A DNA stretch of 64,000 nt, taken from IMG/VR virus record IMGVR_UViG_3300037882_003354, positions 124,001-188,000 of that record; one strand, written 5' to 3'. A program made the position numbers and the translations under genes. Below, in pieces: positions 13,469-45,625 of this stretch (the stretch's first letter is position 1; every line of letters starts with the position of its first letter). The notes below the pieces were generated by a model. It was not told the origin of the DNA, did no database searches, and saw only the letters and a list, made by a program, of their open reading frames with translations.

Positions 13469-13474
13469 TAAATA
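13469..13474 (+). promoter_or_regulatory. late-type promoter TAAATA
   Basis: cATAAATA 6 nt before ATG 13481; resembles T4 late TATAAATA. Confidence 0.6.
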
Positions 13475-13480
13475 TTCACT

Positions 13481-14728
13481 ATGAGAGCACGCGAATTCCT
13501 TAGATTACTTGAAGAAGATGCATCATCTTCTGACCCTTTGTACGGGCTAAAAGTCATGATTGCCGGCAAGATCAAAGATCTTCCACCCACCAAAGAAACA
13601 CAAGACGCCCTGACTGAGATTGAAGATCTACTCAGCAATGTGGGCGCTGGTGGACGACTGGGCTTGATCAATCAGACATTGAGCTCCATTCATGATCCCA
13701 GTGTGACCAAGGCACAAAAACTCCTGGCCAAATACATATTGAGTGTTCCCATGACACGGGAACAACGAGATGATCTGTTCAGTCGGTGGCGTAATGATCA
13801 ACTGGTCAACAAGGATCTGTTGTTGCAGACTGGGCAGCATGAGATCAAGGACATCATACTGGGCTATGATGAGAATCCTGCCATCAAGGAACTCACCATT
13901 GATCTGGCACAGGTACAGGCCATTGGACAGGGCAAGGGAGAATTTCTCCTCAGCGTGTTCAGCAAGAGCATTTCCAAATTGCAGAAGGGTGACCTCATGA
14001 TCGATGGTCACCAGATTGAAGTCAAAACCTATGACGTAGGTGGCGGTCGATTCTATGACCAGGAGGTTCGAACAGCACAGGGGTACAGCGCCTCCGTGGA
14101 GAATTTCAGGAACACCTGGGCTGATGAAATCGCCTATGCATTTCCCAGTCTGGCCAAGTCGGGATTGAAGCTGGATGATCTCATACTGCTGTCTGACCAC
14201 ATTGAAGTAAAAAAGAAAAAGAAGTACTGGGAGTCTGTCCGACAGGTTTTCCAGAATCTGTTTCCCGGCCAGGACACGTCGGGCATCATCGATGCCATGC
14301 AGGTGGGCAGCAGTGGCGCTGCCAAGCAACTGTATGCATTGACCAGTGTCAAGTATTACCAGAGTGTCAAGAAGGACGATTACGGCATTATTTTCATCAA
14401 CCTGTCAGCTGCCATACCCACATTCGTATTCTTTAAAGATCCTGATGAGTTGTCCGACAGTGGACTGCGGTTGCATGCATCCACGGCCTATCCCGTGGCC
14501 GCCATGGATCCCAAGGATGCATATCCACAGATACGTATTGTACCCGGCGGTGGTGGCGTCACCACAGCACCCAGTTCACCCACTGCGTCACGCAGCCCAG
14601 CTGCGGCGGCTGCACCAGCAGCACGTAAACCCAAACCTGCACCTGTTGCAGCACCCGTCGCTGCACAACCCGCACCTGCTGCCACCACACCACCATCGGT
14701 GCCGGCGGACACGCAACAGCAGCCTTGA
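13481..14728 (+). CDS. hypothetical protein with PD-(D/E)xK-like motif and Pro/Ala-rich tail
   Basis: GKGE...KGDLMIDGHQIEVKT; low-complexity C-terminus. Confidence 0.7.
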   Translation: MRAREFLRLLEEDASSSDPLYGLKVMIAGKIKDLPPTKETQDALTEIEDLLSNVGAGGRLGLINQTLSSIHDPSVTKAQKLLAKYILSVPMTREQRDDLFSRWRNDQLVNKDLLLQTGQHEIKDIILGYDENPAIKELTIDLAQVQAIGQGKGEFLLSVFSKSISKLQKGDLMIDGHQIEVKTYDVGGGRFYDQEVRTAQGYSASVENFRNTWADEIAYAFPSLAKSGLKLDDLILLSDHIEVKKKKKYWESVRQVFQNLFPGQDTSGIIDAMQVGSSGAAKQLYALTSVKYYQSVKKDDYGIIFINLSAAIPTFVFFKDPDELSDSGLRLHASTAYPVAAMDPKDAYPQIRIVPGGGGVTTAPSSPTASRSPAAAAAPAARKPKPAPVAAPVAAQPAPAATTPPSVPADTQQQP

Positions 14729-14780
14729 TCGATCAGGACATTTAATACACCGGTGGCGATCTTTCCGGTAAATATTTTAC

Positions 14781-15335
14781 ATGAACAAACGAATATCCTG
14801 CCAGGGACAACTGCTGGCCGCCAATCCGGTAAACCCTGCCGATGAACTCTGCAAGGCCGTCATCCTGGTGCTCAGCCACAACCCCGACCGGGCTATTGGC
14901 ATACAGATCAACAGCCCCCTGGAAAATCTCACACTACAAGCAGTGGCCGGTAAATTGGGCATAGAGTATGAAGGTGCAGACCCCATCTGGTCTGGTGGCC
15001 CAGCCGGACCAACTAAAATTCATGTCATACATAGTCTGGACTGGGCCAGCCTGAGCACTGTGCAAATCAACGAAGGAATTGGAGTCACCAGTGATGTGTC
15101 AGTGATTGCTGCACTCAGTCGTGGTGATGGCCCTGAACATTTCCGAGCATGTTCGGGATTCTGGATCTGGGAGGATGGACGTCTGGATCGGCAACTGGAT
15201 GTCCGGTCACAAGAGCCCTATACCTGGGAACTCAGCGCCGCCACCGTGACGTCTGTGTTCCAGGGCGAGGGCACCATGCAGTGGCTGGCCGTTCTGGAAG
15301 ACAGTGCCCAGCTGCAGATAGACAACTGGTTCTAA
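14781..15335 (+). CDS. YqgE/AlgH (DUF179) family protein
   Basis: LLAANP, AVILVLSH, AIGIQINSP, GGP, HVIHS, FRACSGFWIW..GRLD; TAAATA at 14769-14774. Confidence 0.8.
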   Translation: MNKRISCQGQLLAANPVNPADELCKAVILVLSHNPDRAIGIQINSPLENLTLQAVAGKLGIEYEGADPIWSGGPAGPTKIHVIHSLDWASLSTVQINEGIGVTSDVSVIAALSRGDGPEHFRACSGFWIWEDGRLDRQLDVRSQEPYTWELSAATVTSVFQGEGTMQWLAVLEDSAQLQIDNWF

Positions 15336-16822: not shown

Positions 16823-17807
16823 TTTCCAGTTTCCTCTTCAGTAGATGTAGATTTATCTCTCCACTGACCTTGTAGTGTAATATTGTGGACAACGTGTATA
16901 ACCTGCCGTATCGTTTCACAGCATCAGCCGCATCTTTGACATCTGACTCCCAGGGCGGCAAGCTCACGCTCCAGCCCTGATCGACAGCCACCTTGATCAT
17001 CTTGGCGCCCGCTCGATCACGATCAGGTACCACTATGACCTCCCGACCCAGGGAATTTATTCTAGCGCATTGTGTTTCATTGGGTTCATTGTGCATGATG
17101 GCCACTCCATCCACAGCAATGGCATCAAACTGTCCTTCAACTACTATAACAAATTTACGCTCGTTTGTCTGTCTATCCAGGTTAAAAACATAACCAGGTT
17201 GCGCATCTGTCAGGTACTTGGGTTTGCCGGGTGTAATCTTGCGACCAGTGTAGCCCACAATCTTGCCCTGATGATAGAAGGGAATGATGACTCTATCCCG
17301 GTAACCCTTGGCTGCACTCCAGTGCCAGTTGTACCAATCCCAGCCCATCTTGCGTTCATCCACCAGGTACGTGATTATATCAAGCAGTTCAGCTTCTTGC
17401 ATGCCCTGAGCTATCCATGTGTCCATGGGCAAACAGTCTGCAGGCAGAGGACGTTCCTCCAAGGCCAGTTGCAATGCTTTTTTGGATACAGGTTGATCGT
17501 CTTTGATCTTGAGTGCCAGCAGGTTCAACTTGCCTATGTCCATGTCACTAGCGCCCAACCATTTGAACAAATTTTTGGTATTCTTGCTCAGCAGCTTGCC
17601 CGGGGACCAGCCGGCTTTAAAATTACAGTTGAAACAACTGTATGCCCAGCCACCATCTGGGCTGGTCTTGATACCGCCTCGCTTCCTGTCATCCCTCTTT
17701 TCGCCGTTGTACGAACAACAGACCGAATTGAAACTATCCCACCCGCTGGGTGTGGATTTTCGATTGGGCGGCAGCAGTGAGAACAGGGCGGCCTGTATGT
17801 CGTTCAT
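16809..17807 (-). CDS. DNA primase (T4 gp61-like)
   Basis: Zn finger CC...CFNC, RVIIPF, GYTGR, TOPRIM VEGQFDA, PDRD, KDAADA. Confidence 0.9.
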   Translation of the reverse strand: MNDIQAALFSLLPPNRKSTPSGWDSFNSVCCSYNGEKRDDRKRGGIKTSPDGGWAYSCFNCNFKAGWSPGKLLSKNTKNLFKWLGASDMDIGKLNLLALKIKDDQPVSKKALQLALEERPLPADCLPMDTWIAQGMQEAELLDIITYLVDERKMGWDWYNWHWSAAKGYRDRVIIPFYHQGKIVGYTGRKITPGKPKYLTDAQPGYVFNLDRQTNERKFVIVVEGQFDAIAVDGVAIMHNEPNETQCARINSLGREVIVVPDRDRAGAKMIKVAVDQGWSVSLPPWESDVKDAADAVKRYGRLYTLSTILHYKVSGEINLHLLKRKLENAEE

Positions 17808-17812
17808 GCACT

Positions 17813-17841
17813 ATTTTAACACCTGTAGAGCACTTTGTCAA
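17813..17841 (-). promoter_or_regulatory. sigma70 promoter giving a leaderless primase mRNA
   Basis: TTGACA-17-TAAAAT-agtgc-ATG on the minus strand. Confidence 0.75.
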
Positions 17842-18652
17842 ATGAACCGTAATATGCAGGATTGTCGTTGTCAAATTCAGCAGGTGCAGTGGCTGGCACA
17901 TACATGATTCGAACATAGGAAAAGATGCCGTTGAAGTTTACATAATCAACACCGGTGAAGTCGTCGTAAGACAGTGTTTGTACAGTTACGTATCGATCAA
18001 AACTTTGCGGGCTGTTGTACAAGGTGCCCTGTACATACACGGTGCCACGGAAACCGGTCATGTACATGGCCATGGTGTGCAAGGCAGTGTTACTATTATA
18101 CTCTGGGCATGCATAAACATTACCGCTCTTGTGCTCGTACTGATTGGTAAATGAATTAAATGATTTGTTAAAACTCACGATCTCTTGGCTGGACTGTAGC
18201 ACAGGATTAATGTCTTCGGCCAAGTGAACAGTGCCAGCAACTCCGTAATAGGTGTTGGCGTAAGTGGGCAAATACGTGCCGTCATCAGGATCTCGATACT
18301 TGACGCTGAATTGATAACTGGACTTGGTGAGATCCATGGTGTCGCTTTCCGTCAGGGTCAGCAGGGCCAGTCCCCGTGTGCTGGTGTTGGTCTCAATGAC
18401 CTCCAGTTGCTTCTCCAGCACCAGCCGTTGGCTGATGGTGTCGAACATGGAGAATACAAATGTCTGCGTGTTGCTGATGGACACTCGCTTTTGATCGCTA
18501 TTCTTAAACTGAATGCGTACCTTGTTCTTGATTCCCTTTTGAATCTTGAGATCGTGCTGATACATAACTTGATTGACTCCTCGTACAGTGGGGTACAAAT
18601 CTAATATTACATCCAGATTGTTGTCATATAAATAGATTGGTAAATTTTGCAT
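17816..18652 (-). CDS. hypothetical, likely virion structural protein
   Basis: beta-rich; start MQNLPIY 5 nt after TAAATA (18658-18663). Confidence 0.7.
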   Translation of the reverse strand: MQNLPIYLYDNNLDVILDLYPTVRGVNQVMYQHDLKIQKGIKNKVRIQFKNSDQKRVSISNTQTFVFSMFDTISQRLVLEKQLEVIETNTSTRGLALLTLTESDTMDLTKSSYQFSVKYRDPDDGTYLPTYANTYYGVAGTVHLAEDINPVLQSSQEIVSFNKSFNSFTNQYEHKSGNVYACPEYNSNTALHTMAMYMTGFRGTVYVQGTLYNSPQSFDRYVTVQTLSYDDFTGVDYVNFNGIFSYVRIMYVPATAPAEFDNDNPAYYGSFDKVLYRC

Positions 18653-18672
18653 ACTAGTATTTATTGATAACA

Positions 18673-19056
18673 ATGTCAACAACCACCATCTTCCAAGAAA
18701 ACTATCCCTTTATCACCTGCATCAAGTCAAACGACATTGAATACGTGGGGTTGATCATCAATAACGATACCTATATCACCAGCATCTACGATATTGCAAC
18801 ATTACGTTCCGGTGATGAACGTCGCATTTTTTTGGAAATGGGAGAAGTATGGTGGTGGGAGAGCAACCGTAAAATACCCATCAACATATTTCTTAAAAAA
18901 GAAATGCAATTGTTCAAGTATACCATCAAAACTTTCAACAGCAAGGACACCGTTATAGTCTTCGGACCCACGGTAAATCTCAGTGAGATTGCCGAGAAAC
19001 GCGTCAAGCGCAAATCCATTCAATTGGTCAGGGTTCCCAAGCAGAATCTCGACTGA
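18673..19056 (+). CDS. conserved phage hypothetical protein
   Basis: WWWESNRKIPINIFL motif; TATAAATA at 18627-18634 upstream. Confidence 0.75.
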   Translation: MSTTTIFQENYPFITCIKSNDIEYVGLIINNDTYITSIYDIATLRSGDERRIFLEMGEVWWWESNRKIPINIFLKKEMQLFKYTIKTFNSKDTVIVFGPTVNLSEIAEKRVKRKSIQLVRVPKQNLD

Positions 19057-22938: not shown

Positions 22939-22939
22939 G

Positions 22940-27848: not shown

Positions 27849-28862
27849 TCAAGTGGACTGGCGCTTGCGAATCATGGCAATAATGTCTGCAGCACGGCTG
27901 CCTGCATCACCACTTGCTGCTGGCGCAGCCTCCGTCTTGGGTTCCTCCCAAGGAGCATCTTCAGCATCTTCTTCCACTGGTGCAGGTGCAGCGGCACGAA
28001 CAGGGGCCGCTGGTGCCGGAGTTGCAGCAGGTGCCGCAGCCCGTGGTGCTGAGCCAGTGGCCTGACCACTGCCACCCATGCCGGCTGGCTTGTAGTATGC
28101 ACCCCAACGTTCCATGTCAAATGCATCACCGTCCACAGACGCTTCAAACATTTCCTTGATTACCTTGAGTTCCACATCAGTGGGCTTCTTGGGCAAGAAA
28201 CTCTTGAGGTCAAACAGACCGTGTTGTGCAATGGCTGCATTTTCTACTTCGCTCAGAGCACGTTCACGACGAGCCCAGGTGGAGGTGGAGTAGTCAGCAT
28301 AACCGCCCTTGCTGGTCTTGGCGATCTTGAAATCCAGTCCACGTACCAGGTCAGTGGGCAATTCTTCAATCTCGCTGTCCATGAGCGCGTTCTTGACGAT
28401 GTTAAAAATCTGGCTGCCGATGATGAATCGGCGGATGGGATTCTCAGGAACTTTGCCGTCCTCTTGCAACTTGCTGTCTACAACAAATCCCTGGAACAGA
28501 TAACTTTTCTTCTTCCAATACTTGCGACCCATGTCTTCCAGGCTCTTGTCCTTGAACCAAGGGCGCACCTCTGTCAGAACAGGGCAGGTTTCGCCCCACA
28601 TTTCCATACACGGAACTTGCACAGTCACTGGCTTGGAATTGGTCTCACCCTTGATTCCGGCAAAAGGCAACTTGATCATTGCTCGTTCGATCCAGAAAAA
28701 AGTGTTATTGGGATCTGCATCTGGCAGGAAACGCACTGTGGTAGTGGTTCCTTCTGCTGCATTCCAGTGTGGGAAGATTGCGTTGTCTCCACCTGCTGCG
28801 CCGCCGGTGTTTTGTTGAGATGACGATTGAAGTTTCGCGCGAATTTCTGCTAACGTGGCCAT
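27849..28862 (-). CDS. single-stranded DNA-binding protein (gp32-like)
   Basis: VRFLP, CMEMWGETCPV, GLDFKIAK, YADYSTS, acidic tail. Confidence 0.88.
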   Translation of the reverse strand: MATLAEIRAKLQSSSQQNTGGAAGGDNAIFPHWNAAEGTTTTVRFLPDADPNNTFFWIERAMIKLPFAGIKGETNSKPVTVQVPCMEMWGETCPVLTEVRPWFKDKSLEDMGRKYWKKKSYLFQGFVVDSKLQEDGKVPENPIRRFIIGSQIFNIVKNALMDSEIEELPTDLVRGLDFKIAKTSKGGYADYSTSTWARRERALSEVENAAIAQHGLFDLKSFLPKKPTDVELKVIKEMFEASVDGDAFDMERWGAYYKPAGMGGSGQATGSAPRAAAPAATPAPAAPVRAAAPAPVEEDAEDAPWEEPKTEAAPAASGDAGSRAADIIAMIRKRQST

Positions 28863-28920
28863 AATGTTCTCCTTGATAATGTGCCTATTTTATGCCATTT
28901 TCCTAGAGCCAACTGACTAA

Positions 28921-31900: not shown

Positions 31901-32182
31901 ATATCGCATCTCTCTTAAAAAACCATACCACATGCGCCGCACGGGATCATCACGATTTTCAGTGATACCCTGGCTGTAGTAAACTTTTAGACTGCCCAGA
32001 TCCCCCAGGCTGATGCTCACGCGGCCCAGGTTGTTGCCTTCTATGACAAAGTCAAAGTCGAAAAATCTCGCTTGCGCGGGATCAATGGTGACTGCGCCTG
32101 TTTTGTCGCCCATTTCTAAATTACTGAAACGGCTGCGAACTTTATCAAACAGGTCTTGGCTGATTATTTGAATGGCTTCCAT
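28997..32182 (-). CDS. large acidic putative internal virion protein / polyprotein
   Basis: 1061 aa; late TAAATA 5 nt upstream; repeated QG(M/V)(S/A)EG; ends ILKLAGL. Confidence 0.75.
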   Translation of the reverse strand: MEAIQIISQDLFDKVRSRFSNLEMGDKTGAVTIDPAQARFFDFDFVIEGNNLGRVSISLGDLGSLKVYYSQGITENRDDPVRRMWYGFLREMRYFAKRRLLRFDTRDIAKTNLDKNDFKHLAATQGPKEQDTNTMNENKKTRHHVAEGSLNEFAPDGFNGGDDGNDLQLYIDVAKKLNMKKYKPSTAHALIAKKMAELVDVVNDDKVDYARHMARKAQGLPSMLDQQGMSEGSAADGSVNYTLDHPVDKEYVYHIYRDGEKAGTYHSVDQAQRIVANMKKTNRLTKYKITRSPRSKMAGPTGQLPEQGMSENVSIEDMKISADTMTLDDFVEVYGEENEHIWHDENPEQGVSEGMDSLTFWKQQAQKAGGSDKIDWYTIGVEHGRQGINLNPPYGAGARAVSLYGKGLDAGQQDMAEGLQEGRWNNKSSRKTSRAVQGKTEVIVRHAHAVDEEYAGSRSQRKNIKAIFIQNKEGERFKYPFIHTAGAFAMAQHVDHGGTPHDPAGKAIIGMSEQIAQLAEFQRKVQHASLHDDATGITERAIGRLHELKSQMAALGRRSHYESWMAGFNEEDMMDDGLTMDEVTMEQYKQTFTQSSFQEELAGYFPLLHRIMSEVNQVDLADYVQEERSETKDETGRVVSWKDEGEWKASSKKDGRGRVTNLSDKARRETEKMSKEKSPAESIDAFEDWADATEQGKLTDDQIALMKQALEELPQDQSGPELKLGPDGQTAWQFFNELGIEDSDLEDKFKDMANVDAETNALEVFKLWATDNYPELTVALGMSGTQAPAQEPAPAEPAPAEPVAPATPAAENMDGSGIPKMMSKEGMIKEVAKIVKSFYNRDNPDVGPFRGEEGIVIDVKKKISEMFGEQAGEQAEQMAGMFMEKLTQEYQERHGKPVGGDGLTIDGLKEILNRIKGKVEGIGDQGHGGEDFNTNIMSSEEHNPDHSHQYDTTMRHADNPTVQQRMAAHDIKPGVAGYRDRIDMLHDLERTGKLKSESPNKSDIPAAQRKAQGGDWKVTGKDLEKERTKSPTSPEGLAALKAKLGMSEGLTDILKLAGLKK
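30930..31756 (-). repeat. five 17-nt dispersed in-frame repeats, consensus CAAGGCATGTCGGAAGG
   Basis: copies at 30930-30946, 31122-31138, 31248-31264, 31488-31504, 31740-31756. Confidence 0.85.
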
Positions 32183-32193
32183 AGTATTATTTA

Positions 32194-33783
32194 TTAATAA
32201 CTGCTGATATAGATGGGCATGGGCAGGTCGTGTTCTTCCATGCCCTCCTGGTCTCGCATCTTTTCATAGATACTTGGGTCCCAATCCTGCAGGATCATGA
32301 TCATGCGTACAGCCAACAGCAGGCTGGACACCAGGTCATCGTGTTGTCCGGGTTTGGCCTTGAAACTCAAGGCTGCAGACACATATGTTTTGAGTTCACT
32401 GATCAGGCTCTTGCTGTGCAATTTAAGTTTTTTATTCTCAATCAGTTGTTTTAACTTGGCACAGGCATTGATCTTGGCCACATGTGTGGTATTAAATCCC
32501 TTGCGGAACCTGCGCACATGACCCTTTTTAACCGGCTCGCTTAAAAACATGCCAGGGAATGTTTCTTCTCCCAGCTCACTAATGGCCACCAGGGCCGCTT
32601 CACCTATGCTGTTGTTTTCCACACTGTAGTATATGCTGGGCACCAGGCCCTGCTTGGCACATTCATCCTCGATAAATTTCAGCAGATCTCTAAGCACACG
32701 TGCCTGCCCCTGCACCGGCGTGGTATTGTGGTTCCATTCACACACCTGTTCCAGACTGGGCACTTCTATGACTTCAATGGCTGCATAATCTCCACCAGTG
32801 CCCAGACTGGGATCCAGAGATACGATGTAGGTCATGGCAGGGTTCACTCGTTTGTACCATCGGGCCTGCCCCATTTTCATCAAGGGTTCTTTGCCTTCCA
32901 AATTGGACAGGGTGATGCTGTTAACCAAGGTTTCATCGAACACCAGGAATATGCACTCGTGTTCTCTTTGAAATCTTTCAGCCCCCACACGACTGCGTTC
33001 GGCCTCAGCCCAGATTTCGTCACGATCTGGATGTTCACTCCAGATGGCAATACAGGGGTAGAAACCATTCCTGCCCAGTTCGGTCCGATTGCCGTATTCG
33101 TCGAATCTCTTGTTGGCCTCGTTCCAGATCTGTGCAAACTGATCCTCGTCGCTGTTGGGGGTGGATGTGATGATGGCTTTACCGCCAGTGGCCAGGGTAG
33201 GGCTGATACTGGTCCAAAACTCAGTGGCAATGCCAGGTTCCACATAGGCAAACTCATCCAGATAGATCAAGCTCAAGCTCATGCCTCGTCCAGTGGTTTC
33301 AGTGGTAGTCTGTGCCACAATGCGGCTGCCATTTTCAAATTCAATACTCTGCTTGTTGTAACTGGTGACACCCGCACGTATCCAATCAGGGCATGTCTCG
33401 TATGCATAACGCAGACGTTGCATGATTTCCTGCGCACCTGTATATTTGTGCGCAGCAATCAGTATGGTGCTGTCGGGCACAAACATGGCATACCATAACA
33501 GGTAGCCCACCGCAGTGGTGGTTTTCCCCAGCTGACGCCCCAGCATGTTCACACTGAATCTGTGTTTGTGATAACTGTCCAGCAGCCGTTGTTGGTAGGG
33601 AAAGGGGGCGTATTGTATTTTGCCCTTGGTGGGGTGTTGTATAAAAAAGTAATTGGCTAAAAAATATTCAGGGCCAGTGTCAGCATGCTGGCATTTCATT
33701 AGATCCGCAATGTCCTGCTCAGAAAATTTCTGTGTGACATTGGCCTTTTTAACCAAGTTGCCGTCTAAGTTTTTTGATCCCAT
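32194..33783 (-). CDS. terL: terminase large subunit (gp17-like)
   Basis: GRQLGKTT, YLDEFA, ITSTPN, F.REHEC, DPSLGTGGDY, HDDLV. Confidence 0.93.
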   Translation of the reverse strand: MGSKNLDGNLVKKANVTQKFSEQDIADLMKCQHADTGPEYFLANYFFIQHPTKGKIQYAPFPYQQRLLDSYHKHRFSVNMLGRQLGKTTTAVGYLLWYAMFVPDSTILIAAHKYTGAQEIMQRLRYAYETCPDWIRAGVTSYNKQSIEFENGSRIVAQTTTETTGRGMSLSLIYLDEFAYVEPGIATEFWTSISPTLATGGKAIITSTPNSDEDQFAQIWNEANKRFDEYGNRTELGRNGFYPCIAIWSEHPDRDEIWAEAERSRVGAERFQREHECIFLVFDETLVNSITLSNLEGKEPLMKMGQARWYKRVNPAMTYIVSLDPSLGTGGDYAAIEVIEVPSLEQVCEWNHNTTPVQGQARVLRDLLKFIEDECAKQGLVPSIYYSVENNSIGEAALVAISELGEETFPGMFLSEPVKKGHVRRFRKGFNTTHVAKINACAKLKQLIENKKLKLHSKSLISELKTYVSAALSFKAKPGQHDDLVSSLLLAVRMIMILQDWDPSIYEKMRDQEGMEEHDLPMPIYISSY

Positions 33784-33796
33784 GTGAGTATTTACT

Positions 33797-33820
33797 GAAA
33801 AGAATAGCCTCCGAAGAGGC
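33797..33820 (-). terminator. rho-independent terminator, cUUCGg loop
   Basis: GCCTC-TTCG-GAGGC-TATTCTTTTC. Confidence 0.75.
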
Positions 33821-33844
33821 CATCTGGTTCAGGTGTCTAATGTA

Positions 33845-34837: not shown

Positions 34838-34839
34838 AA

Positions 34840-35430
34840 TTATTTCCTTGTTTGGGCTGATGCCAACACAGTTCCTGCGTCTGCAGGGGTATCAGTATTA
34901 TACTTGGCTGGGCCGTCTGTGGGGATTTCTTCCCCACGAGCCTTGCGTTGCAACTTTAGCAGAGCGTTGAGTTCTTTGACAAACTCACCGTTGTATTTGT
35001 CACCATAGTAATCTTCAAACTTGGGACTGCCTGCTTCTTTATAATCAGGATCATCAAGCAGTGCACCGGTGCGTGGCTCCACCAGAGTTTGATATTCTTC
35101 ACTGGGCTCGCCAGGACGACGAACTACTAAATTTTGTTTGCTCACTTCTAGGCCAGCGGCCAAATATTCTGTAAGTTCCTGCTGAGTGGTGGGATACTGC
35201 AAGCTGACTTCGTAGATGCTGACTTCGCAATTCTTGACCTGCGGGAAGTCCAAGGGCAGTGCCTGAATGGGAGTCTTGCTCACCTTCTTGAACACATTGA
35301 CTTCAAATCGTTCCAGCATGGATTTCAATTTTTCTTCTTGTTCAGAGGTAAAGTCGCCTGCTACCTTGACTCGAAAGTCATATGTTTTACCAGAGGTAGA
35401 TTCTGAGAGATAGTCGAGGAATGTTTTCAT
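34840..35430 (-). CDS. hypothetical virion-associated protein
   Basis: MKTFLDYLSE start typical of T4-like head proteins; late box upstream. Confidence 0.7.
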   Translation of the reverse strand: MKTFLDYLSESTSGKTYDFRVKVAGDFTSEQEEKLKSMLERFEVNVFKKVSKTPIQALPLDFPQVKNCEVSIYEVSLQYPTTQQELTEYLAAGLEVSKQNLVVRRPGEPSEEYQTLVEPRTGALLDDPDYKEAGSPKFEDYYGDKYNGEFVKELNALLKLQRKARGEEIPTDGPAKYNTDTPADAGTVLASAQTRK

Positions 35431-35437
35431 AGTGCTT

Positions 35438-35920
35438 TTATTTATTCAAATTCTTTAATTTTTCCAGAATACTATTACGGTCAGTGAGAATATAACCCTG
35501 ACCTTCCACAGTTTCTCCGGTTTCTGTGCCATGTTTTTTGTCTATGGCCAGCTTCTTCAGCTGTAGGTCAACCATTTTTAACTTCTTGTCTATCTTGGCA
35601 CTCTTGGCCTGTATGGCAGCGTTCATCATGTTGGCTGCCACTTCAAACATTCTGGCACCATACCGGGCCTCCACATTCATGCCCAGGTCCATGAGATCGT
35701 CGTATGCTTGCTCGGCCTTGGATGCCAGATCGTCAAATTCTTGATCGCTGAGATCGCCCAGACCAGTTACCCTGGGCAATGCTGCAGAAATTTTGTCAAA
35801 TTCTTCCAGTTGATCTTGTAGATTGATTGCAGGTACCACCTCTGTGGCCTTGGCATTGTTTTTAATCAAGGGCTCATTATTGGGCGGTAAATCCAAAAGT
35901 TCTTCTAATTTTCGAGTCAT
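35438..35920 (-). CDS. putative terminase small subunit (gp16-like)
   Basis: helical; ARMFEVA...KLKMVDLQLKK resembles gp16 PRxYEV...KL.DLQ; near terL. Confidence 0.5.
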   Translation of the reverse strand: MTRKLEELLDLPPNNEPLIKNNAKATEVVPAINLQDQLEEFDKISAALPRVTGLGDLSDQEFDDLASKAEQAYDDLMDLGMNVEARYGARMFEVAANMMNAAIQAKSAKIDKKLKMVDLQLKKLAIDKKHGTETGETVEGQGYILTDRNSILEKLKNLNK

Positions 35921-35928
35921 GTGTGTAC

Positions 35929-36372
35929 TTATCGTGTCTTAGCGCCGCCGTGAAAAATATCGCCCTCACTGATAATTCTAAATTTAATTCCCTGCTGCTT
36001 GCACCAGTTGTTGGCCGCCGCCCACTTGGCTTGATTTTTAACAAACTGCGCCTGGTTGTAGGGATTCTTGCCCACTTTTTCTTTCAGAGTCTGGTTGAGT
36101 GGTTTGATTTCTATGAGTTCCACATGCTTGACCTGGTTTCGATCGATGTAGGTGATTAAAAAATCAGGCACATACACAGTCTGCTTGCCAGTCAGCGGAT
36201 CCCTGTAGGGAATACGCACGCACTCACTGGCCCACTGCTGTATGCTGGGGTTATTGTCACAAAACGTCATGAAAGACAATTCCCAACCGCTGCGGAATGT
36301 GGGCTGTCGTGTGCCCATGTATTTGTCTGGATTTTTAACCTTGTATATACCCTGATTAAACTTGAGACTCAT
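35929..36372 (-). CDS. head completion nuclease-like protein (gp4-like)
   Basis: FRSGWE..FM.FCD.NP, WASE..IPY, YVPDF, IEIKP, KW.AA..WC. Confidence 0.85.
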   Translation of the reverse strand: MSLKFNQGIYKVKNPDKYMGTRQPTFRSGWELSFMTFCDNNPSIQQWASECVRIPYRDPLTGKQTVYVPDFLITYIDRNQVKHVELIEIKPLNQTLKEKVGKNPYNQAQFVKNQAKWAAANNWCKQQGIKFRIISEGDIFHGGAKTR

Positions 36373-36749: not shown

Positions 36750-36753
36750 GGAT

Positions 36754-38001
36754 TTATCCTCCAGTAATCTTGGATTCTGTGGCAGGTGTTGTGCCGTTGG
36801 TGCTGCTGTTTTTGTCAGCAAAAATATTGATGCCAACTCTGCCAAGTTGTCCTATGCCAGACTGACTCAATCCTTGTTCAGCCGCTCCACGAGTACCACC
36901 TGGTTGATTGCCGGTGGCCTGTATGTTGCCCAGCACCCCGGATACAATACTGTATCCTTCTGTTTTAAGATTTAAATTTTTTGCATTTTTAACTACATTG
37001 ACGCCCTGTACAACTGCTGCCAGGTAATTGGGATCATCACTGCTCAGGTTGCCAAATACTGAAGCCGCGCCCGCCAAGACTCCGCCGGCCCCAAACAGAG
37101 TGTTGGTTCCGTTTCCACCCACACTCAGTGGGCTGGGGCTGGTGTCGTAGTACACTGCTGTAAACTTTGATGACTCATCACCGCTGGTGATTGCCCCAGA
37201 TTTATACAATACATCTTCGTATGCCACAGTCATTTTATTTTGTAATATTTTAGCGCCATCGTTTTGATCCAAATTATCATGAGCCCAGTCTGTGACCAGG
37301 GGATTTATCAATGTTATTTGAGTGAACTTCTGCTGGTGCAACACGTATATGTCTATGCTTTTAAAAAATGGAATGGATTGCGAATTACTCAGACCGTAGG
37401 CATAATCGGTGGTGCCATACTTGGTGTCTCCAAATGCAGTGGGCACACCTGTGGCACCTGAAGTTGCACCTGGCGATCTACCGCGACCACCGCGCAATGT
37501 GTTCAGTACATTGCTGGCTACGCCTTCTAAAAAGCCCGCGGGCTTGTCGCCACCATTGTTTGCCGGGGCCGTGGTCAGCTGGCCGTAATTACTGTCGGAA
37601 AAATAATATCTGTAGTAGTTGATCCATAAATTGTTGGTTATGTCGCTGTTGTCGTCATGGAAATCCATGCTGACTGGTTGATATGTTAGTTTGGATTGCA
37701 CCACGGTTTTTCTGTTATATTGATTCAGCGTCTCTGTGGTAATGTTAAACTTGGGCAAATCAATTTTTTTAACCAGCAACCCAATGTCCTGAACACCGCC
37801 CTTCTGCAACCACTGTGCATTTCCCACTGCCTCGGTGTTGACATTAAAACTGACAAAATATAGGAATCCGTGCTTGGGCGACCGGGCATAGGTGTTCCTG
37901 ACATACAGGCGATCAGCATGTTGATAGTCTTTGAGGTCGCCGGTGGTTCCAAAAAACCCACTGGAAACACCGCTTAAAAAATTTGTGAAGGCATTACTCA
38001 T
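36754..38001 (-). CDS. tail-tube-fold baseplate protein (gp48/gp54-like)
   Basis: LVKKIDLP, NQYNRK, Y.PV.MDFHDD, TLINP tube-like motifs; adjacent to the tube gene. Confidence 0.65.
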   Translation of the reverse strand: MSNAFTNFLSGVSSGFFGTTGDLKDYQHADRLYVRNTYARSPKHGFLYFVSFNVNTEAVGNAQWLQKGGVQDIGLLVKKIDLPKFNITTETLNQYNRKTVVQSKLTYQPVSMDFHDDNSDITNNLWINYYRYYFSDSNYGQLTTAPANNGGDKPAGFLEGVASNVLNTLRGGRGRSPGATSGATGVPTAFGDTKYGTTDYAYGLSNSQSIPFFKSIDIYVLHQQKFTQITLINPLVTDWAHDNLDQNDGAKILQNKMTVAYEDVLYKSGAITSGDESSKFTAVYYDTSPSPLSVGGNGTNTLFGAGGVLAGAASVFGNLSSDDPNYLAAVVQGVNVVKNAKNLNLKTEGYSIVSGVLGNIQATGNQPGGTRGAAEQGLSQSGIGQLGRVGINIFADKNSSTNGTTPATESKITGG

Positions 38002-38015
38002 GATAATATTTAGTC

Positions 38016-38044
38016 AAAGAAAAAGGCCTGGTTGCCCAGGCCTT
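38016..38044 (-). terminator. rho-independent terminator, GCAA loop
   Basis: AAGGCCTGG-GCAA-CCAGGCCTT-TTTCTTT after the tail tube gene. Confidence 0.85.
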
Positions 38045-38061
38045 GGTGTGGGGCGTGAGCT

Positions 38062-38697
38062 TTAACCGCCCACTGCCAGTGTACGTACAGTACGACCAAC
38101 TGATGCACCCAGTCCGGTTGGGTTGCCTGAACCGTCGACTTGGATGGCATTGTCATAGCAAACAGTCAATGCAATGTCCATGATGTCTGTTGACGAATTG
38201 TAGTCGCCACCTTGATAGGTGGCACCTTGTAACCAGCACCCGTGGAACTCAAATGTTTCCAAGGTGTTGGGTGTGTAGGCACCATTACCACCGTCCAGTA
38301 TTTCCACTCTCATCATGAACTTGTAGTCAATACCTGATGCTGCACCACTTTGTTCAAAGAAGTCGAATTGCTTTTGCAGTTGCTCGCCCACTTTCTTGGT
38401 AACTGCGTTGGTAACGTCGTCACGCAGAGTTAATTTGGCATTGGCAAAAGAGTGTTTTCCAGCTATCTTGACAGTGCTGTTATAAACACCCAGTTTGATT
38501 TCGTCAAAAGAAATCTCAGGGCGTGTGACATTCATCACCTGTTTGGTTAATTCCGTAGTAGGAGTACCTGCCACACCGAATCCATCCATGGTCACGCGAA
38601 AGCGATACTTGAGTTTGGGCATGAGCAGACCCTGAGAGGTTGAACTCTGATTGGTGGCTAATGGTACTGAAAATTTGCTTAGACTTGAGATTGGCAT
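38062..38697 (-). CDS. tail tube protein (gp19-like)
   Basis: PKLKYRFRV, VTRPEISF, IAGKH, LRDD, GCW, YDNA; follows the sheath gene. Confidence 0.85.
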   Translation of the reverse strand: MPISSLSKFSVPLATNQSSTSQGLLMPKLKYRFRVTMDGFGVAGTPTTELTKQVMNVTRPEISFDEIKLGVYNSTVKIAGKHSFANAKLTLRDDVTNAVTKKVGEQLQKQFDFFEQSGAASGIDYKFMMRVEILDGGNGAYTPNTLETFEFHGCWLQGATYQGGDYNSSTDIMDIALTVCYDNAIQVDGSGNPTGLGASVGRTVRTLAVGG

Positions 38698-38727
38698 AAA
38701 TGCTCCTTATTCTTTATATTGTTCTGA

Positions 38728-41700: not shown

Positions 41701-41736
41701 TGTTACTTGTACGCCGGGTGAACCTAATGTGGCCAT
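38728..41736 (-). CDS. tail sheath protein (gp18-like)
   Basis: SPGVQVTVVDES, PWFAPAGTRRG, INPI, LDRINVARL, FEPND..TR, PVKAVEFIYI. Confidence 0.93.
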   Translation of the reverse strand: MATLGSPGVQVTVVDESFYTPAAPGTVPLIFVATAQDKSNASASGTAQGTTAANLGKVWAITSQRDLSDTFGTPLFYTNNGNPIHGGELNEYGLQTAYSLLGVSSRAYVVRADVDLAELSPTTSVPAGDPVSGTYWVDTKNSLFGINEWDAVTQKFTTKTPLIIDDSNKDVVADLVSDVYSPKSGFGNRGDYAMVVTSNNTNALYYRTATNWVEVSSNTGNLWDESATKKLTVAPHYDYPDFTTSTGNSAVTGSVWIKTTTPGLGANWMVKYYNGSTQAWTSINAPVYDSARQALEKIDYAGGGKNIAVGTLFVESDPEHYGLDVGPAAGFKLWRRSNSGATVIVSDASTATNGVSSEFTIRETLASDTDWSNDIVITVPGSSIASVASQITVGISNSALQNITANYDLVTNRLTLTHKLGGDFQLLDGVGTPLDIAGFAAYDPVNKSGTVNLYQAPQGDGYDFSASNWKPLVYQATGTTPTTKPVDGKLWYDSNMESVDIMYNEGTRWIGYRNAFATSDPNGPIISATKPTVQSDGTDLVTGDIWIDTSDPDMYGRHIYVWDRDLLEWVLQDVADQTSPTGWVFADARWSDAGATGPETVTAITDLLSSNYVDPDCVDPRLYPRGTRLWNLRRSGFNVKQFMAGHINVNANNGSNLRFANDPMAGYSPDRWVTVSANNEDGSGKFGRLAQRGYVVSKLKATIDTNEAVRDTDALMFNLIACPGYPEVIQNMVAFNTDRGQTAFVVGDTPFRLEPTATELSNWGNNAALAFDNGDDGAVSYDSYMGMFYPSGFTTDNAGNNIVVPPSHMILRTILNSDNVSYPWFAPAGTRRGGVDNATSVGYITSEGEFKTASLYEGLRNVMHDVKINPIATLPGVGLVNFGQYTRAKNASSLDRINVARLVCYLRQQLGILAKPYLFEPNDAQTRNEIKAAVESLLVELVGQRALYDFIVVCDTSNNTPARIDRSELWVDVAIEPVKAVEFIYIPLRLLNTGEIASGNLG

Positions 41737-41837
41737 GTTTTAAATCTCCTTAATTGGATTACTTTGTTTTATTTAGCAACTATGTTCAAAAATCTCTGGA
41801 TTAAATACCCAAAAAGGTATACAAAAAGGGCGCATGT

Positions 41838-43557: not shown

Positions 43558-43586
43558 ACTATATTGCATTCGTATTACATAGTCAA
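43558..43586 (-). promoter_or_regulatory. sigma70 promoter for the dNMP kinase
   Basis: TTGACT-17-TATAGT. Confidence 0.7.
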
Positions 43587-43603
43587 TGAGTTTTTAAAAT
43601 ATT

Positions 43604-44362
43604 TTATCCAGTGACCCAGGTGAGTGGAGTCGAACCTTCTTTGTAATTGATCAAATCTTGTTCCAGGGCTTCCATTTCAGCCTTGCCCTCTCCCTTGAGT
43701 GCAGCACCGTTGAGTTGGGTACCGCCCTGTGGGCTGGCGATGGTGGCAAATTTTTCACGAGCCTCGCCCAAGATCACCTTGCAGTTGGCCAATGCGTAAT
43801 CTTTCAACCACTGACCCGCATAGTTGTCCTGCAACAGATTGAAGTCTGGGCGATAGTTGTACATCCAGACCAGCAGTTCTTCGTCGGACCTGGGACGCTG
43901 CATGATGGTCAGCATGCGGCTGGTCTTGTTGAAGGTAAAATTAATTTCTGATCCAAACATTTTACCCACTTGCTTCTGATAACTGGCAAATGCATAATAT
44001 GTGGCCAGACCGCCCATGTTGGTGGAAGTCAACAGATAGGTGTTGGAATATGCCAGGTTAAACGGCTCGAACAGGCTGCCACCATCGCCGCCACCTGATC
44101 TGGAGCCAATACTACGACGGAACAACTGCCGGATTTCCATGACTTCCTTGGGCATGATGTAGTCATTCTGGTCCACCTGTATGGTCAGGAATCCAAAACT
44201 TTCTTCCACGGCATTGCTACTGCGCTGGCGGTACTTGGCCAGGGCACGATTTAATGCAGTTTCATAATGAATTGGGTCAAGTTCTACATCCACCATGCCG
44301 GAACCCAGCATGGCTTGCACGTACTCAACTACTTGTCGGCGAGAGTTTAGTGTTTCATCCAT
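43604..44362 (-). CDS. neck protein (gp13-like)
   Basis: LG.GMVDVEL, WLKDYALA..K..LG..R.KF, P.GG..LNG; start reassigned to 44362. Confidence 0.8.
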   Translation of the reverse strand: MDETLNSRRQVVEYVQAMLGSGMVDVELDPIHYETALNRALAKYRQRSSNAVEESFGFLTIQVDQNDYIMPKEVMEIRQLFRRSIGSRSGGGDGGSLFEPFNLAYSNTYLLTSTNMGGLATYYAFASYQKQVGKMFGSEINFTFNKTSRMLTIMQRPRSDEELLVWMYNYRPDFNLLQDNYAGQWLKDYALANCKVILGEAREKFATIASPQGGTQLNGAALKGEGKAEMEALEQDLINYKEGSTPLTWVTG

Positions 44363-44425
44363 GTCAATATTTAGTCTCAGATGTGGTCTTTCCATCTGTT
44401 ATCACTCGATTCAATAAATATAACT

Positions 44426-45625
44426 ATGCCAAGACTCAGCCTGTACAGATCAGAAAAAGGTGCGGATTTCCGATTCATTGACCGCGTGATCAATGAAGAA
44501 TTTCAAGTGGGAGGTGTGGACATTTTTGTACACAAATACCTGGGCCCAGTGGATCCACTGGCTGGCGAAAGCACACCCAGCACACCTGTCAATTCCAATG
44601 CCATACCGGAACTGGGCATCCAAGATATAATCTTCATGGAAAACCGAGATCGGCATTATGATCCAGATGTGTATGTCATGCGTGGCATATACCAGATGCA
44701 GGATTTGGATTTCAACCTGAGTCAGTTTGGTCTGTTTTTACAGAATGACACTGTGATGTTGCACTTCCATCTGAGGAATACCGTGGACACCCTGACGCGC
44801 AAAATCATGCCAGGTGACGTGGTGGAAATGCCTCACTTGAAAGATGAGTATGCCCTGGACGACCACATGGTTGCGCTCAAGAGATTTTATGTGGTGCAAG
44901 ACGTCACACGACCTGCCAATGGATTCAGCCAGACCTGGTATCCGCACCTGTTGCGTGCCAAGTGTGTGCCCCTGGTGGACAGTCAGGAATTTAAAGAAAT
45001 TCTGGACGGCGATGCCGGTGACGGCACACCGCTGCGCGATTTGCTCAGCACTTACCAGAAAAGCATTGAGGTCAATGATCAAATCATTGCCCAGGCTGAG
45101 GCAGATGTTCCGAAAAGTGGATATGATACCCAGAGTTATTTTGTCATACCCACAAGAGAATCAGGATTGGTTGATAATGCTGATGCATCCTCCGTGGACG
45201 AGGATGCCAGCATAGACCAAGCCATCTACGACGCCAGTGTGGTGTTGAGAAGTCCCAACAGAGACCTGTATGTGGGGTACATGACCGGAGACGGAGTACC
45301 GCCCAACGGTGCTCCATATGGTTTCGGAATCACTTTTCCCAATAATCCAGTAAATGGATCATTTTATCTCAGAACCGATTATTTGCCCAATCGGCTGTTT
45401 AGATTTAATGGCAACAACTGGATCAAGTTTGAAGACAATGTTCGCATGACAGTGAACAACTTTGGTGCAGGCGATGTTGCTGGCGGTGCCAATGCAGGCA
45501 AGGACATCCGACAAACTCAGAAACTTGGATTCATTAACAACACAAACACCTCCACCATCGCGGGCGAGGTTGTACAAGAGCGTCAGGCGCTGAGCAAGGC
45601 ATTGAAACCCAAGGCGGACAATTGA
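44426..45625 (+). CDS. neck/head-closure protein (gp14-like)
   Basis: LSQFGLF, PGDVVEMPH; start MPRLSLY 5 nt after TAAATA. Confidence 0.65.
   Translation: MPRLSLYRSEKGADFRFIDRVINEEFQVGGVDIFVHKYLGPVDPLAGESTPSTPVNSNAIPELGIQDIIFMENRDRHYDPDVYVMRGIYQMQDLDFNLSQFGLFLQNDTVMLHFHLRNTVDTLTRKIMPGDVVEMPHLKDEYALDDHMVALKRFYVVQDVTRPANGFSQTWYPHLLRAKCVPLVDSQEFKEILDGDAGDGTPLRDLLSTYQKSIEVNDQIIAQAEADVPKSGYDTQSYFVIPTRESGLVDNADASSVDEDASIDQAIYDASVVLRSPNRDLYVGYMTGDGVPPNGAPYGFGITFPNNPVNGSFYLRTDYLPNRLFRFNGNNWIKFEDNVRMTVNNFGAGDVAGGANAGKDIRQTQKLGFINNTNTSTIAGEVVQERQALSKALKPKADN

What the first reader, a model, noticed from the sequence alone, without database searches (positions are those of the whole stretch)
13469..44428. 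Late and replication genes also look leaderless: genome-wide strategy
Seen: TAAATA (or TAAGTA) lies 5-8 nt before the ATG with no SD for 13481(+), 14781(+), 18652(-), 32182(-), terL 33783(-), 35430(-), 35920(-), 38001(-), 44362(-) and 44426(+). Primase has TTGACA-17-TAAAAT-5nt-ATG. In contrast, the high-copy sheath, tube and gp32 genes carry AGGAG SDs. Established: T4 late promoters are a lone TATAAATA -10 box read by a gp55-type sigma. Inference: leaderless versus SD-led initiation is used systematically, perhaps to set stoichiometry or escape translational shut-off.
Basis: partly seen in the sequence, partly recalled or inferred. Interest (0 to 1): 0.75.

Follow-up and report, generated by a model that had tools for sequence, protein, structure and literature searches.

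The report
Late promoters fused to start codons
In this 322-kb freshwater jumbo phage and hundreds of uncultured relatives, a T4-like late promoter box (TAAATA) sits exactly where transcription should begin on the A of the ATG. Many late genes are therefore probably made from leaderless mRNAs, while the most abundant proteins keep a short leader with a strong ribosome-binding site.

Summary
All ten ATGs have TAAATA (one TAAGTA) 5-8 nt upstream and no Shine-Dalgarno (SD) sequence. Exact TAAATA-N5-ATG occurs 6 times in the window against 0.24 expected.

The genome encodes a gp55-type late sigma factor. By T4 numbering, TAAATA-N5 places +1 on the A of the ATG.

The decisive evidence is comparative, from about 240 IMG/VR loci with 30-94% amino-acid identity:
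- The layout is kept gene by gene: terL, the 1061-aa, 415-aa and 278-aa proteins, and the divergent 44362/44426 pair.
- Spacer sequence varies but spacer length does not.
- A covarying terminator hairpin sits 3 nt before the terL box.
- Where the box has moved to 17-30 nt, an SD appears. This happened at least 23 times on the terL tree.
- Spacings of 9-15 nt are avoided.

Sheath, tube, capsid, scaffold and gp32-like SSB genes are SD-led throughout. The primase has a conserved TTGACA-17-TAAAAT-5-ATG, and an early block has perfect sigma-70 promoters fused to ATG.

By a crude count, about 41 of 352 ORFs (12%) look leaderless. This is a systematic class, not the whole genome. No transcription start sites could be mapped because the metatranscriptome contigs were too sparse. 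The stoichiometry idea fits the data but is untested, and the shut-off-escape idea has no support.

The parts
13469..13483 (+). TAAATA-N6-ATG module of a 415-aa protein of unknown function
   Evidence: It is the first start in the ORF, with an in-frame stop 4 codons upstream.
14769..14783 (+). TAAATA-N6-ATG module of a 184-aa AlgH-like (DUF179) protein
17805..17841 (-). Sigma-70-type promoter fused to the primase start: TTGACA, 17 nt, TAAAAT, 5 nt, ATG
   Evidence: TTGACA-17-TAAA(A/C)T-5/6-ATG was kept in the relatives inspected (34 distinct upstream sequences, 28 printed), 63-94% aa identity.
18650..18663 (-). TAAATA-N5-ATG module of a 278-aa virion structural protein
   Evidence: Leaderless-type in 55 of 55 distinct relatives.
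32180..32193 (-). TAAATA-N5-ATG module of a 1061-aa virion protein. The box directly follows the terL stop codon.
   Evidence: Leaderless-type in 68 of 69 distinct relatives, spacing 4-7.
33781..33794 (-). TAAATA-N5-ATG module of the large terminase
   Evidence: Leaderless-type in 56 distinct relatives, an SD instead in 6, other in 3. One 151-nt metatranscriptome piece ends at 33781.
33803..33824 (-). Intrinsic terminator hairpin plus T-run, ending 3 nt before the terL TAAATA box
   Evidence: In 43 sequences 97.2% of cells are paired, 5 pairs show compensatory change, and 0 of 500 shuffles reach this.
35428..35444 (-). TAAATA-N8-ATG module of a 196-aa structural protein
   Evidence: In relatives, 25 have the box at 4-8 nt without an SD and 21 have it at 17-27 nt with AGGA/GGAG inserted.
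35918..35931 (-). TAAGTA-N5-ATG module of a 160-aa protein (weak small-terminase-like match)
   Evidence: In relatives 28 are leaderless-type (some also TAAGTA) and 20 are leadered with the box about 26 nt away.
37999..38012 (-). TAAATA-N5-ATG module of a 415-aa tube-like protein
   Evidence: Leaderless-type in 24 of 26 distinct relatives, spacing 5 in 22.
38023..38044 (-). Intrinsic terminator hairpin (9 pairs, 6 G-C) plus T-run just upstream of the 38001 promoter box
   Evidence: Hairpin plus T-run is also seen upstream of the box in most relatives.
44360..44428 (.). Divergent pair of boxes: CAT-N5-TATTTA, then 41 nt, then TAAATA-N5-ATG. It serves the head-tail adaptor-like gene (-) and a 399-aa virion protein (+).
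   Evidence: In relatives the two boxes lie back to back. The ATG-to-ATG distance is only 24-30 bp in 40 of 52. The left gene has N5 in 52 of 59. The right gene has N4-8 in 48 of 59, and the other 11 have AGGAG.
41734..41775 (-). Comparator, tail sheath start: TAAATA, 33 nt containing AAGGAG, ATG (same box type, with a leader)
38695..38720 (-). Comparator, tail tube start with AAGGAG
   Evidence: SD-led in 4 of 4 relatives.
28860..28910 (-). Comparator, gp32-like SSB start with AAGGAG and a repeated GGCA(T/C)A motif in the leader
   Evidence: SD-led in 52 of 52 relatives.

Best explanation
TAAATA is the core of this phage's late promoter. It is read by host RNA polymerase carrying the phage's gp55-type sigma factor.

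At about a third of these promoters the box lies 5 nt (range 4-8) before the ATG. The polymerase therefore starts on, or within 0-3 nt of, the A of the start codon. The mRNA begins with AUG and is translated without an SD, by the leaderless route in which a ribosome binds a 5'-terminal AUG.

Intrinsic terminators placed immediately upstream at terL and the 415-aa gene insulate these units. Back-to-back divergent boxes do the same at 44362/44426.

Genes that need very high output or leader-based control use the same box 17-35 nt upstream, with a strong SD in the leader. Sheath, tube and one gene upstream of the capsid module do this. SSB, scaffold and capsid are also SD-led but carry other A/T boxes. 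A second, sigma-70-type class (early genes and the primase) is fused to ATGs in the same way.

Shown from sequence: the motif, its spacing, its conservation, the terminators, the gp55 homologue, and the swap with SD.

Inferred: the TSS position, recognition by the gp55 homologue, leaderless translation, and any effect on protein amounts.
For: (1) Geometry. In the T4 gp55 open complex the flipped adenines are at -12, -9 and -8, so TATAAATA spans -13 to -6. TAAATA-N5 therefore puts +1 on the A of the ATG.

(2) A gp55 homologue is encoded at G000:215364-216152(-). It matches phrog_12791 at 3e-85 and phrog_234 at 2.9e-24. It is 32% identical to T4 gp55 residues 23-115 and keeps R57, F86, Y97 and T99.

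(3) 76 of 149 TAAATA copies in the genome lie within 40 nt upstream of an ORF start on the same strand. The spacing is bimodal: 4-8 nt without an SD, or 16 nt and more with one, and a dip at 9-15 nt. In relatives the densities are 31 per nt, 0.9 per nt and 3.6 per nt.

(4) Gene-by-gene conservation in about 240 related loci, with variable spacer sequence and fixed spacer length.

(5) A covarying terminator ends 3 nt before the terL box. That leaves 14 nt for both the promoter and any 5' UTR.

(6) The divergent ATGs are only 24-30 bp apart in relatives, and that space is filled by two opposed boxes.

(7) Where the box is not adjacent, an SD is usually present. There were at least 8+8+6+1 switches on the terL tree.

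(8) A pyrimidine is at -1 in 39 of 41 leaderless-type starts against 99 of 168 SD starts (Fisher 2e-6). In relatives T or C is at -1 in 96%. This is the usual Y(-1)R(+1) signature of a start site.

(9) The start codon after TAAATA-N5 is ATG in all 98 cases with an NTG codon.

(10) The independent sigma-70 class, TTGACA-17-TATAAT-N6-ATG, has the same fused geometry.

(11) No metatranscriptome contig crosses any of the five ATGs tested, and one ends 2 nt from the terL ATG. This is weak evidence.
Against: There is no TSS mapping. The RNA runs exist only as sparse short contigs, which show presence and not absence.

- Spacings of 6-8 nt (13481, 14781, 35430, and the right-hand gene of the divergent pair in most relatives) would give 1-3-nt leaders if +1 is fixed at N5+1.
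- The 1061-aa gene has no terminator before it, so it could also be translated from the terL transcript.
- T4-type sliding clamp models find nothing in the genome. gp33 was not searched for.
- The first two bases of the T4 octamer are not conserved. Only 12 full TATAAATA copies exist in the genome.
- The related loci share ancestry, so counts of loci are not independent events.
- My gene set is crude, and 143 of 352 ORFs fell into no class.
- The cultured relative PA5oct has the box only with leaders and SDs, so no laboratory system shows the fused form.
Confidence: 0.75

Rival explanations
1. TAAATA is a late promoter, but adjacency to the ATG is only genome compaction. The proteins would mainly be made from longer read-through or upstream transcripts by translational coupling or re-initiation, and the short transcripts would contribute little.
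For: The 1061-aa gene follows the terL stop codon directly, with no terminator. Many neighbouring genes, such as the head-closure gene at 35929-36372 and the helicase, have neither an SD nor a box and look coupled. Spacing varies from 4 to 8 nt in some families.
Against: terL and the 415-aa gene sit directly behind conserved terminators. The divergent pair cannot be served by read-through in both directions. Compaction alone does not explain three things: the SD that appears whenever the box moves away, the avoided 9-15 nt spacing, and the pyrimidine at -1.
Confidence: 0.1
2. The A/U-rich TAAATA acts in the RNA as an SD-independent translational enhancer (for example a protein S1 binding site) inside longer mRNAs, not as a promoter.
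For: The motif is A/U-rich and lies just upstream of start codons that lack an SD.
Against: The same hexamer sits 17-35 nt upstream of SD-led genes, sometimes in orthologues of the same gene. An enhancer would not need an invariant hexamer at a fixed 5-nt spacing, nor a gap at 9-15 nt. It matches the core of the gp55 promoter and a gp55 homologue is present. At terL the sequence upstream is a terminator, so the motif would rarely be transcribed from upstream.
Confidence: 0.04
3. The box is read by the host's primary sigma factor, as a -10 element without a -35, rather than by the gp55 homologue. The genes would still be leaderless but would not form a gp55 regulon.
For: The phage clearly uses host sigma-70 promoters fused to ATGs for early genes and the primase. 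The T4-type clamp was not found.
Against: TAAATA has A where sigma-70 most needs T (-7), and it has no -35 or TG extension. The early class, by contrast, has near-perfect TTGACA-17-TATAAT. The spacing peak differs: N5 for TAAATA against N6 for TATAAT, as expected for T4-type against sigma-70 geometry. The genes served are virion genes.
Confidence: 0.08
4. The ATGs are mis-assigned, and the true starts lie downstream behind ordinary SDs.
For: Three of the ten ORFs have other in-frame start codons upstream. Four have a downstream start with a weak SD-like match 27-29 codons in.
Against: Homologues align from residue 1-3 across 30-94% identity. In almost every terL relative only one ATG is available in the open frame. 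PHROG profiles align from position 2-6.
Confidence: 0.02

Closest known systems
Bacteriophage T4 late promoters (TATAAATA read by gp55, with gp33 and the gp45 clamp)
   Same: An A/T box at the -10 position with no -35 element, sharing the core TAAATA. A gp55-family sigma factor is encoded by the phage. The box serves virion genes.
   Different: T4 late mRNAs carry leaders with SDs (own knowledge). Here about a third of the boxes abut the ATG. The first two bases of the octamer are not conserved. The gp55 homologue is 303 aa against 185 in T4. T4-type clamp models find nothing.
Leaderless ('TA-led') genes of bacteria, as defined by Zheng et al. 2011 (PMC3160421)
   Same: A -10-like TA signal about 10-12 nt before the start codon, no SD, and an AUG start.
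   Different: That class is read by the primary sigma factor and is common mainly in Actinobacteria and Deinococcus-Thermus. In beta-Proteobacteria it was detected in 9 of 71 genomes, averaging 6.8% of genes. Here the signal belongs to a phage-specific sigma factor, and the class is a phage regulon.
Pseudomonas phage PA5oct (closest cultured relative, terL 54.8% aa)
   Same: Same T4-like structural gene order. (G)ATAAATA boxes lie upstream of structural genes.
   Different: In the 13 PA5oct genes examined, wherever a box is present it lies about 20-30 nt from the start, and most of the starts, including terL, have an SD. Its published promoters are TATAATA/TTGAC types, and the paper does not mention leaderless mRNAs.
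Single leaderless phage mRNAs (lambda cI from PRM, P2 gene V) and the leaderless middle/late genes reported for Thermus phage phiYS40 (own knowledge, not verified in the paper library)
   Same: The promoter is fused to an AUG, and translation proceeds without an SD.
   Different: Those use the host primary sigma factor. In phiYS40 the host is one where leaderless mRNAs are the norm. Here the host signal points to a beta-proteobacterium and the promoter is gp55-type.

Membership tests
T4-type (gp55-dependent) late promoter | The phage encodes a gp55-family sigma factor | tested here: met
   G000:215364-216152(-). phrog_12791 at 3e-85, phrog_234 at 2.9e-24. BLASTP against T4 gp55 gives 32% over 94 aa, E 4e-9. 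Pocket residues R57, F86, Y97 and T99 are kept and H95 is F.
T4-type (gp55-dependent) late promoter | A/T box with the core TAAATA upstream of late genes, and no -35 element | tested here: met
   76 of 149 copies lie within 40 nt upstream of ORF starts on the same strand. The core is invariant in relatives. No spacing-consistent -35 was seen. Conservation upstream of the box reflects terminator hairpins.
T4-type (gp55-dependent) late promoter | Full 8-bp consensus TATAAATA | tested here: not met
   Only 12 TATAAATA copies exist in the genome, and only 1 of them lies 5 nt before an ATG. The two positions before TAAATA are mixed in relatives: A 45%/G 38% at the first and A 39%/G 32% at the second.
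T4-type (gp55-dependent) late promoter | Box at -13 to -6 relative to a mapped transcription start, with transcripts appearing late in infection | not testable with these tools
   There is no cultured host. The RNA runs are held only as sparse contigs.
T4-type (gp55-dependent) late promoter | Activation through a gp45-type sliding clamp and gp33 | tested here: inconclusive
   phrog_223 and PF02916 give no match in the genome. A divergent clamp could be missed. gp33 was not searched for.
Leaderless mRNA | A -10-type box about 10-12 nt before the start codon and no SD (the criterion of PMC3160421) | tested here: met
Leaderless mRNA | The 5' end of the transcript lies at, or within a few nt of, the A of AUG | not testable with these tools
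   Only indirect evidence is available: T4 geometry, a terminator 3 nt upstream of the box, 24-30 bp between divergent ATGs, pyrimidine at -1, and a contig end 2 nt from the terL ATG.
Leaderless mRNA | The start codon is AUG, not GUG or UUG | tested here: met
   After TAAATA-N5, all 98 NTG codons that open an ORF of at least 80 aa in relatives are ATG. After (A)GGAG the counts are 149 ATG, 3 GTG and 5 TTG. The test has low power.
Sigma-70-type promoter fused to ATG (primase and early genes) | TTGACA, 17 +/- 1 nt, TATAAT-like hexamer, then 5-7 nt to the ATG | tested here: met
   About 16 near-consensus cases, mostly at genome 120-136 kb, plus the primase. The primase arrangement is conserved in relatives. 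TATAAT at offset 6 scores 23 against 4.9 expected, p 3e-9.

The most novel reading that the evidence does not exclude
One late promoter type drives two translational tiers, pppAUG mRNAs and SD-led mRNAs. The phage may set their balance by altering the ribosome with its own bS21 protein, which sits next to the anti-SD, possibly together with its tmRNA and ClpX. If so, leaderless versus SD-led would be a switchable regulon late in infection of a proteobacterial host, not a fixed expression level. My evidence neither tests nor excludes this. bS21 (41.2 bits against a 27-bit cut-off), a two-piece beta-type tmRNA (139.5 bits) and ClpX are present, but nothing links them to the promoter layout.
Probability: 0.12. 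Interest if true: 0.85.

Novelty: new variant of a known kind. Interest (0 to 1): 0.6.

Why it matters
Leaderless mRNAs and gp55-type late promoters are each well known. A conserved regulon in which a phage-specific sigma factor's promoter is fused to start codons did not turn up in six full-text searches.

If true, it would have three consequences:
- Gene callers and promoter finders will mis-handle starts in this large group of uncultured freshwater jumbo phages unless they model a promoter box at the start codon.
- The clade offers dozens of natural swaps between pppAUG and SD-led versions of the same gene. That is a ready-made comparative system for asking what leaderless initiation costs or buys.
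- The host, probably a beta-proteobacterium, would have to translate 5'-terminal AUGs well enough to make terminase and virion parts.

The terminator-box-ATG module, about 45 nt in all, is also a very compact and portable expression unit.

Tried and rejected
- **RNA evidence.** Of the RNA runs that hold this stretch, the four laid exist only as 151-314-nt contigs covering part of 32150-38100. No TSS can be read from them.
- **Identity of the genome.** There is no near match among GenBank phages. It is an IMG/VR record with terminal repeats.
- **Host.**
  - A ClpX scan of GTDB genomes gave 48-55% identity across many phyla, with alpha-proteobacteria on top.
  - The bS21 Atlas search returned only viral clusters.
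  - The tmRNA family was the only usable hint.
- **The Bacteroidetes bS21 phages of PMC9723584.** I considered whether this genome is one of them and rejected it. Those have 31-34% GC and carry bS21 next to terL. Here GC is 47.9%, bS21 is 120 kb from terL, and strong SDs and TTGACA/TATAAT promoters are used.
- **T4-type clamp and IF3.** Not found.
- **SSB as capsid.** I first took the highly conserved SD-led 337-aa gene for the capsid protein. PHROGs show it is the gp32-like SSB. The Gp23-type capsid gene lies outside the window and is also SD-led.
- **Intermediate spacings.** Of four apparent cases in my crude gene set (11-13 nt), the one I checked (genome 204766) was a mis-called start. The real start at 204733 has AAGGAG.

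Full report
**What the window is.** The window is bases 124001-188000 of a single-contig genome of 322,512 bp and 47.9% GC. IMG/VR classes the record as complete, with direct terminal repeats. The sequence occurs in freshwater and lake metagenomes and in lake metatranscriptomes. GenBank phages hold no near match. The large terminase is 54.8% identical to that of Pseudomonas jumbo phage PA5oct, followed by Agrobacterium phage Atu_ph07 and a Sinorhizobium phage. The region of the finding holds replication genes (DnaB-like helicase, primase, UvsX-like recombinase, gp32-like SSB). It also holds a T4-like structural block with terminase, head closure, tube, sheath and adaptor genes.

**The observation.**
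TAAATA is followed by 6 nt at 13481 and 14781. It is followed by 5 nt at 18652, 32182, 33783, 38001, 44362 and 44426, and by 8 nt at 35430. TAAGTA is followed by 5 nt at 35920. None has an SD core in the 20 nt upstream.
- Exact TAAATA-N5-ATG occurs 6 times in the window against 0.24 expected.
- I scanned all hexamers at all offsets before all 13,795 ATGs of the genome, with no gene model. TAAATA at offset 5 gives 15 against 3.2, and TATAAT at offset 6 gives 23 against 4.9. Both rank with the SD hexamers (histogram).
- The ATGs are sound starts.

**Is TAAATA a promoter?**
- Of 149 copies in the genome, 76 lie within 40 nt upstream of an ORF start on the same strand. Such positions make up only about 2% of the sequence.
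- The genome encodes a gp55-family sigma factor. It aligns with the promoter-recognition part of T4 gp55 and keeps four of the pocket residues named in the cryo-EM study.
- T4 late promoters are an A/T box at the -10 position with no -35 element.
- In the T4 open complex the flipped adenines are at -12, -9 and -8. TATAAATA therefore spans -13 to -6, and a box followed by 5 nt puts +1 on the next base, which here is the A of the ATG.
- The sigma-70 class peaks one base further out (TATAAT-N6-ATG). That is what canonical sigma-70 geometry predicts. Two promoter types each place their own +1 on the A.

**Comparative evidence, which I consider decisive.**
- Three scans of IMG/VR gave 80 related loci each, around terL, the 399-aa virion gene and the primase.
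- In 687 kb around terL there are 537 distinct TAAATA sites. Of these, 125 lie exactly 5 nt before an ATG that opens an ORF of at least 80 aa. Background is 1-5 per offset.
- terL: 56 distinct upstream sequences are leaderless-type, 6 have an SD instead and 3 are other.
- Other families:
  - The 1061-aa gene is leaderless-type in 68 of 69.
  - The 415-aa tube-like gene is leaderless-type in 24 of 26, with spacing 5 in 22.
  - The 278-aa gene is leaderless-type in 55 of 55.
- In all of these the 5-nt spacer changes sequence freely but not length.
- SD-led genes stay SD-led. The SSB is SD-led in 52 of 52, the tube in 4 of 4 and the 330-aa gene in 7 of 8. Outside the window the Gp23-type capsid and the scaffold genes also have strong SDs.

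**Three features leave little room for a 5' UTR.**
1. At terL a hairpin plus T-run ends 3 nt before the box. Across 43 sequences 97.2% of cells pair, five pairs show compensatory change, and no shuffle or slid register comes close. Transcription arriving from upstream should stop there, so terL needs a promoter within the remaining 14 nt. The 415-aa gene has the same arrangement.
2. At the divergent pair 44362/44426 the relatives have the two boxes back to back. Only 24-30 bp separate the two ATGs in 40 of 52 cases.
3. Pyrimidine precedes the ATG in 39 of 41 leaderless-type starts against 99 of 168 SD-type starts. In relatives it is 96%. This is the usual context of a transcription start.

**A natural swap experiment.**
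- In the 196-aa family all but two of 47 distinct relatives keep TAAATA. In 25 the box is 4-8 nt from the ATG with no SD. In 21 it is 17-27 nt away with AGGA or GGAG inserted at the right place.
- The 160-aa family and terL behave the same way. So do the 11 exceptions at the 399-aa gene.
- Spacings of 9-15 nt are avoided. That is expected if a leader must be either absent or long enough to hold an SD.
- On a terL tree the state changed at least 8, 8, 6, 1 and 0 times in five families. Recombination could inflate these counts.
- An RNA-level enhancer would not show this pattern. This is my main reason for rejecting that rival.

**How general it is.** In a crude set of 352 ORFs, 23 have a late-type box at 4-8 nt and 18 have a sigma-70-type hexamer at 5-7 nt. 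Another 168 have an SD and 143 fall in no class. Decoy rates at internal ATGs are 0.18% and 0.37%. So about 12% of genes, and about a third of gene-proximal TAAATA boxes, are of the fused kind. PA5oct has the box, but in the 13 genes examined it lies about 20-30 nt from the start, usually with an SD between. The fused form is therefore a trait of the freshwater clade.

**What remains inferred.** I could not map a single 5' end. The four RNA runs gave about 30 short pieces on 32150-38100. None crosses any of the five ATGs, and one ends at 33781, 2 nt inside terL. Contigs cannot show absence. Spacings of 6-8 nt may mean 1-3-nt leaders. Recognition by the gp55 homologue, late timing and leaderless translation are all inferences from T4 and from the general rule that a -10 box about 10-12 nt before a start codon marks a leaderless gene.

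- Stoichiometry fits the data. The proteins needed in hundreds of copies, and the SSB, are SD-led. In T4, gene 32 uses its leader for autoregulation (own knowledge). Terminase, adaptor and minor virion proteins are leaderless-type. Against a strict rule, the portal also has a weak SD and three families flip state.
- Escape from shut-off has no support, since the phage's own bulk proteins need SDs.
- Searching for translation genes found bS21, with ClpX beside it, and a two-piece tmRNA of the beta-proteobacterial family. No IF3 was found.
- The tmRNA, the TTGACA/TATAAT early promoters and the strong SDs point to a proteobacterial host, probably a beta-proteobacterium. They argue against the Bacteroidetes hosts proposed for the lake bS21 phages of PMC9723584.

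**Novelty.** Six full-text searches found no description of leaderless genes driven by gp55-type promoters, nor of leaderless mRNAs in PA5oct-like or huge phages. The phiKZ dRNA-seq study reports no leaderless phage transcripts. The AR9 study reports 5' UTRs of 26-491 nt. I class the finding as a new variant of known kinds.

Noticed in passing
window 1-13000 (genome 120-136 kb), + strand: A block of small early-looking genes at 53-60% GC. Each sits behind a near-perfect sigma-70 promoter fused to its start: TTGACA, 17 nt, TATAAT, 6 nt (often ACACAC), ATG. Many open with the same first codons (ATG ACG ACG), which suggests a paralogous family with a duplicated promoter and N-terminus.
   Followed up: partly
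G000:C1:37319-38548 and 37096-37332 (outside the window; locus L088): A phage-encoded ClpX-like ATPase (409 aa) is followed directly by a ribosomal protein bS21 homologue (78 aa; PF01165 41.2 bits, cut-off 27). The nearest Atlas clusters for bS21 are viral.
   Followed up: partly
G000:C1:45244-45616 (outside the window; locus L249 572-943, - strand): A phage-encoded two-piece (permuted) tmRNA. Its best Rfam match is beta_tmRNA RF01850 (139.5 bits, cut-off 84), and the tag peptide reads AANDDAYLMAA. This hints at a beta-proteobacterial host. The genome also has 11 tRNA genes, 10 of them at 302-307 kb.
   Followed up: partly
window 28863-28915 (-), upstream of the gp32-like SSB gene: The SSB leader carries a repeated GGCA(T/C)A motif before AAGGAG. 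The motif and the SD are kept in all 52 relatives. It may be a distinct promoter class, or an autoregulatory leader like that of T4 gene 32.
   Followed up: no
window 18653-18672: An ORF on the + strand starts at 18673, only 20 nt from the ATG of the - strand gene at 18652. The CAT of that start is conserved about 20 nt upstream of the TAAATA-fused ATG in relatives. The promoter of the + gene must lie inside the opposite gene, or be of another type.
   Followed up: no
window 44376-44396: An inverted repeat (CAGATG, 9 nt, CATCTG) lies between the two divergent late boxes in this genome. Most relatives lack this 41-nt insert and have the boxes back to back.
   Followed up: no
locus L084 (PA5oct 122891-136429): PA5oct has (G)ATAAATA boxes about 20-30 nt upstream of several structural genes, with an SD in between. 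These look like its gp55-type late promoters. The published promoter set for this phage lists TATAATA/TTGAC types.
   Followed up: partly
window 16001-30000 against 1-16000: There is a sharp composition change. The + strand early block is 53-60% GC and the - strand replication and structural block is 43-49% GC. Related contigs average 38.9% GC.
   Followed up: no
genome 199705 (-), outside the window: Another terminator-box-ATG module. A G+C hairpin and T-run are followed by TAAATA-N4-ATG, serving a 175-aa ORF just downstream of the capsid gene region.
   Followed up: no
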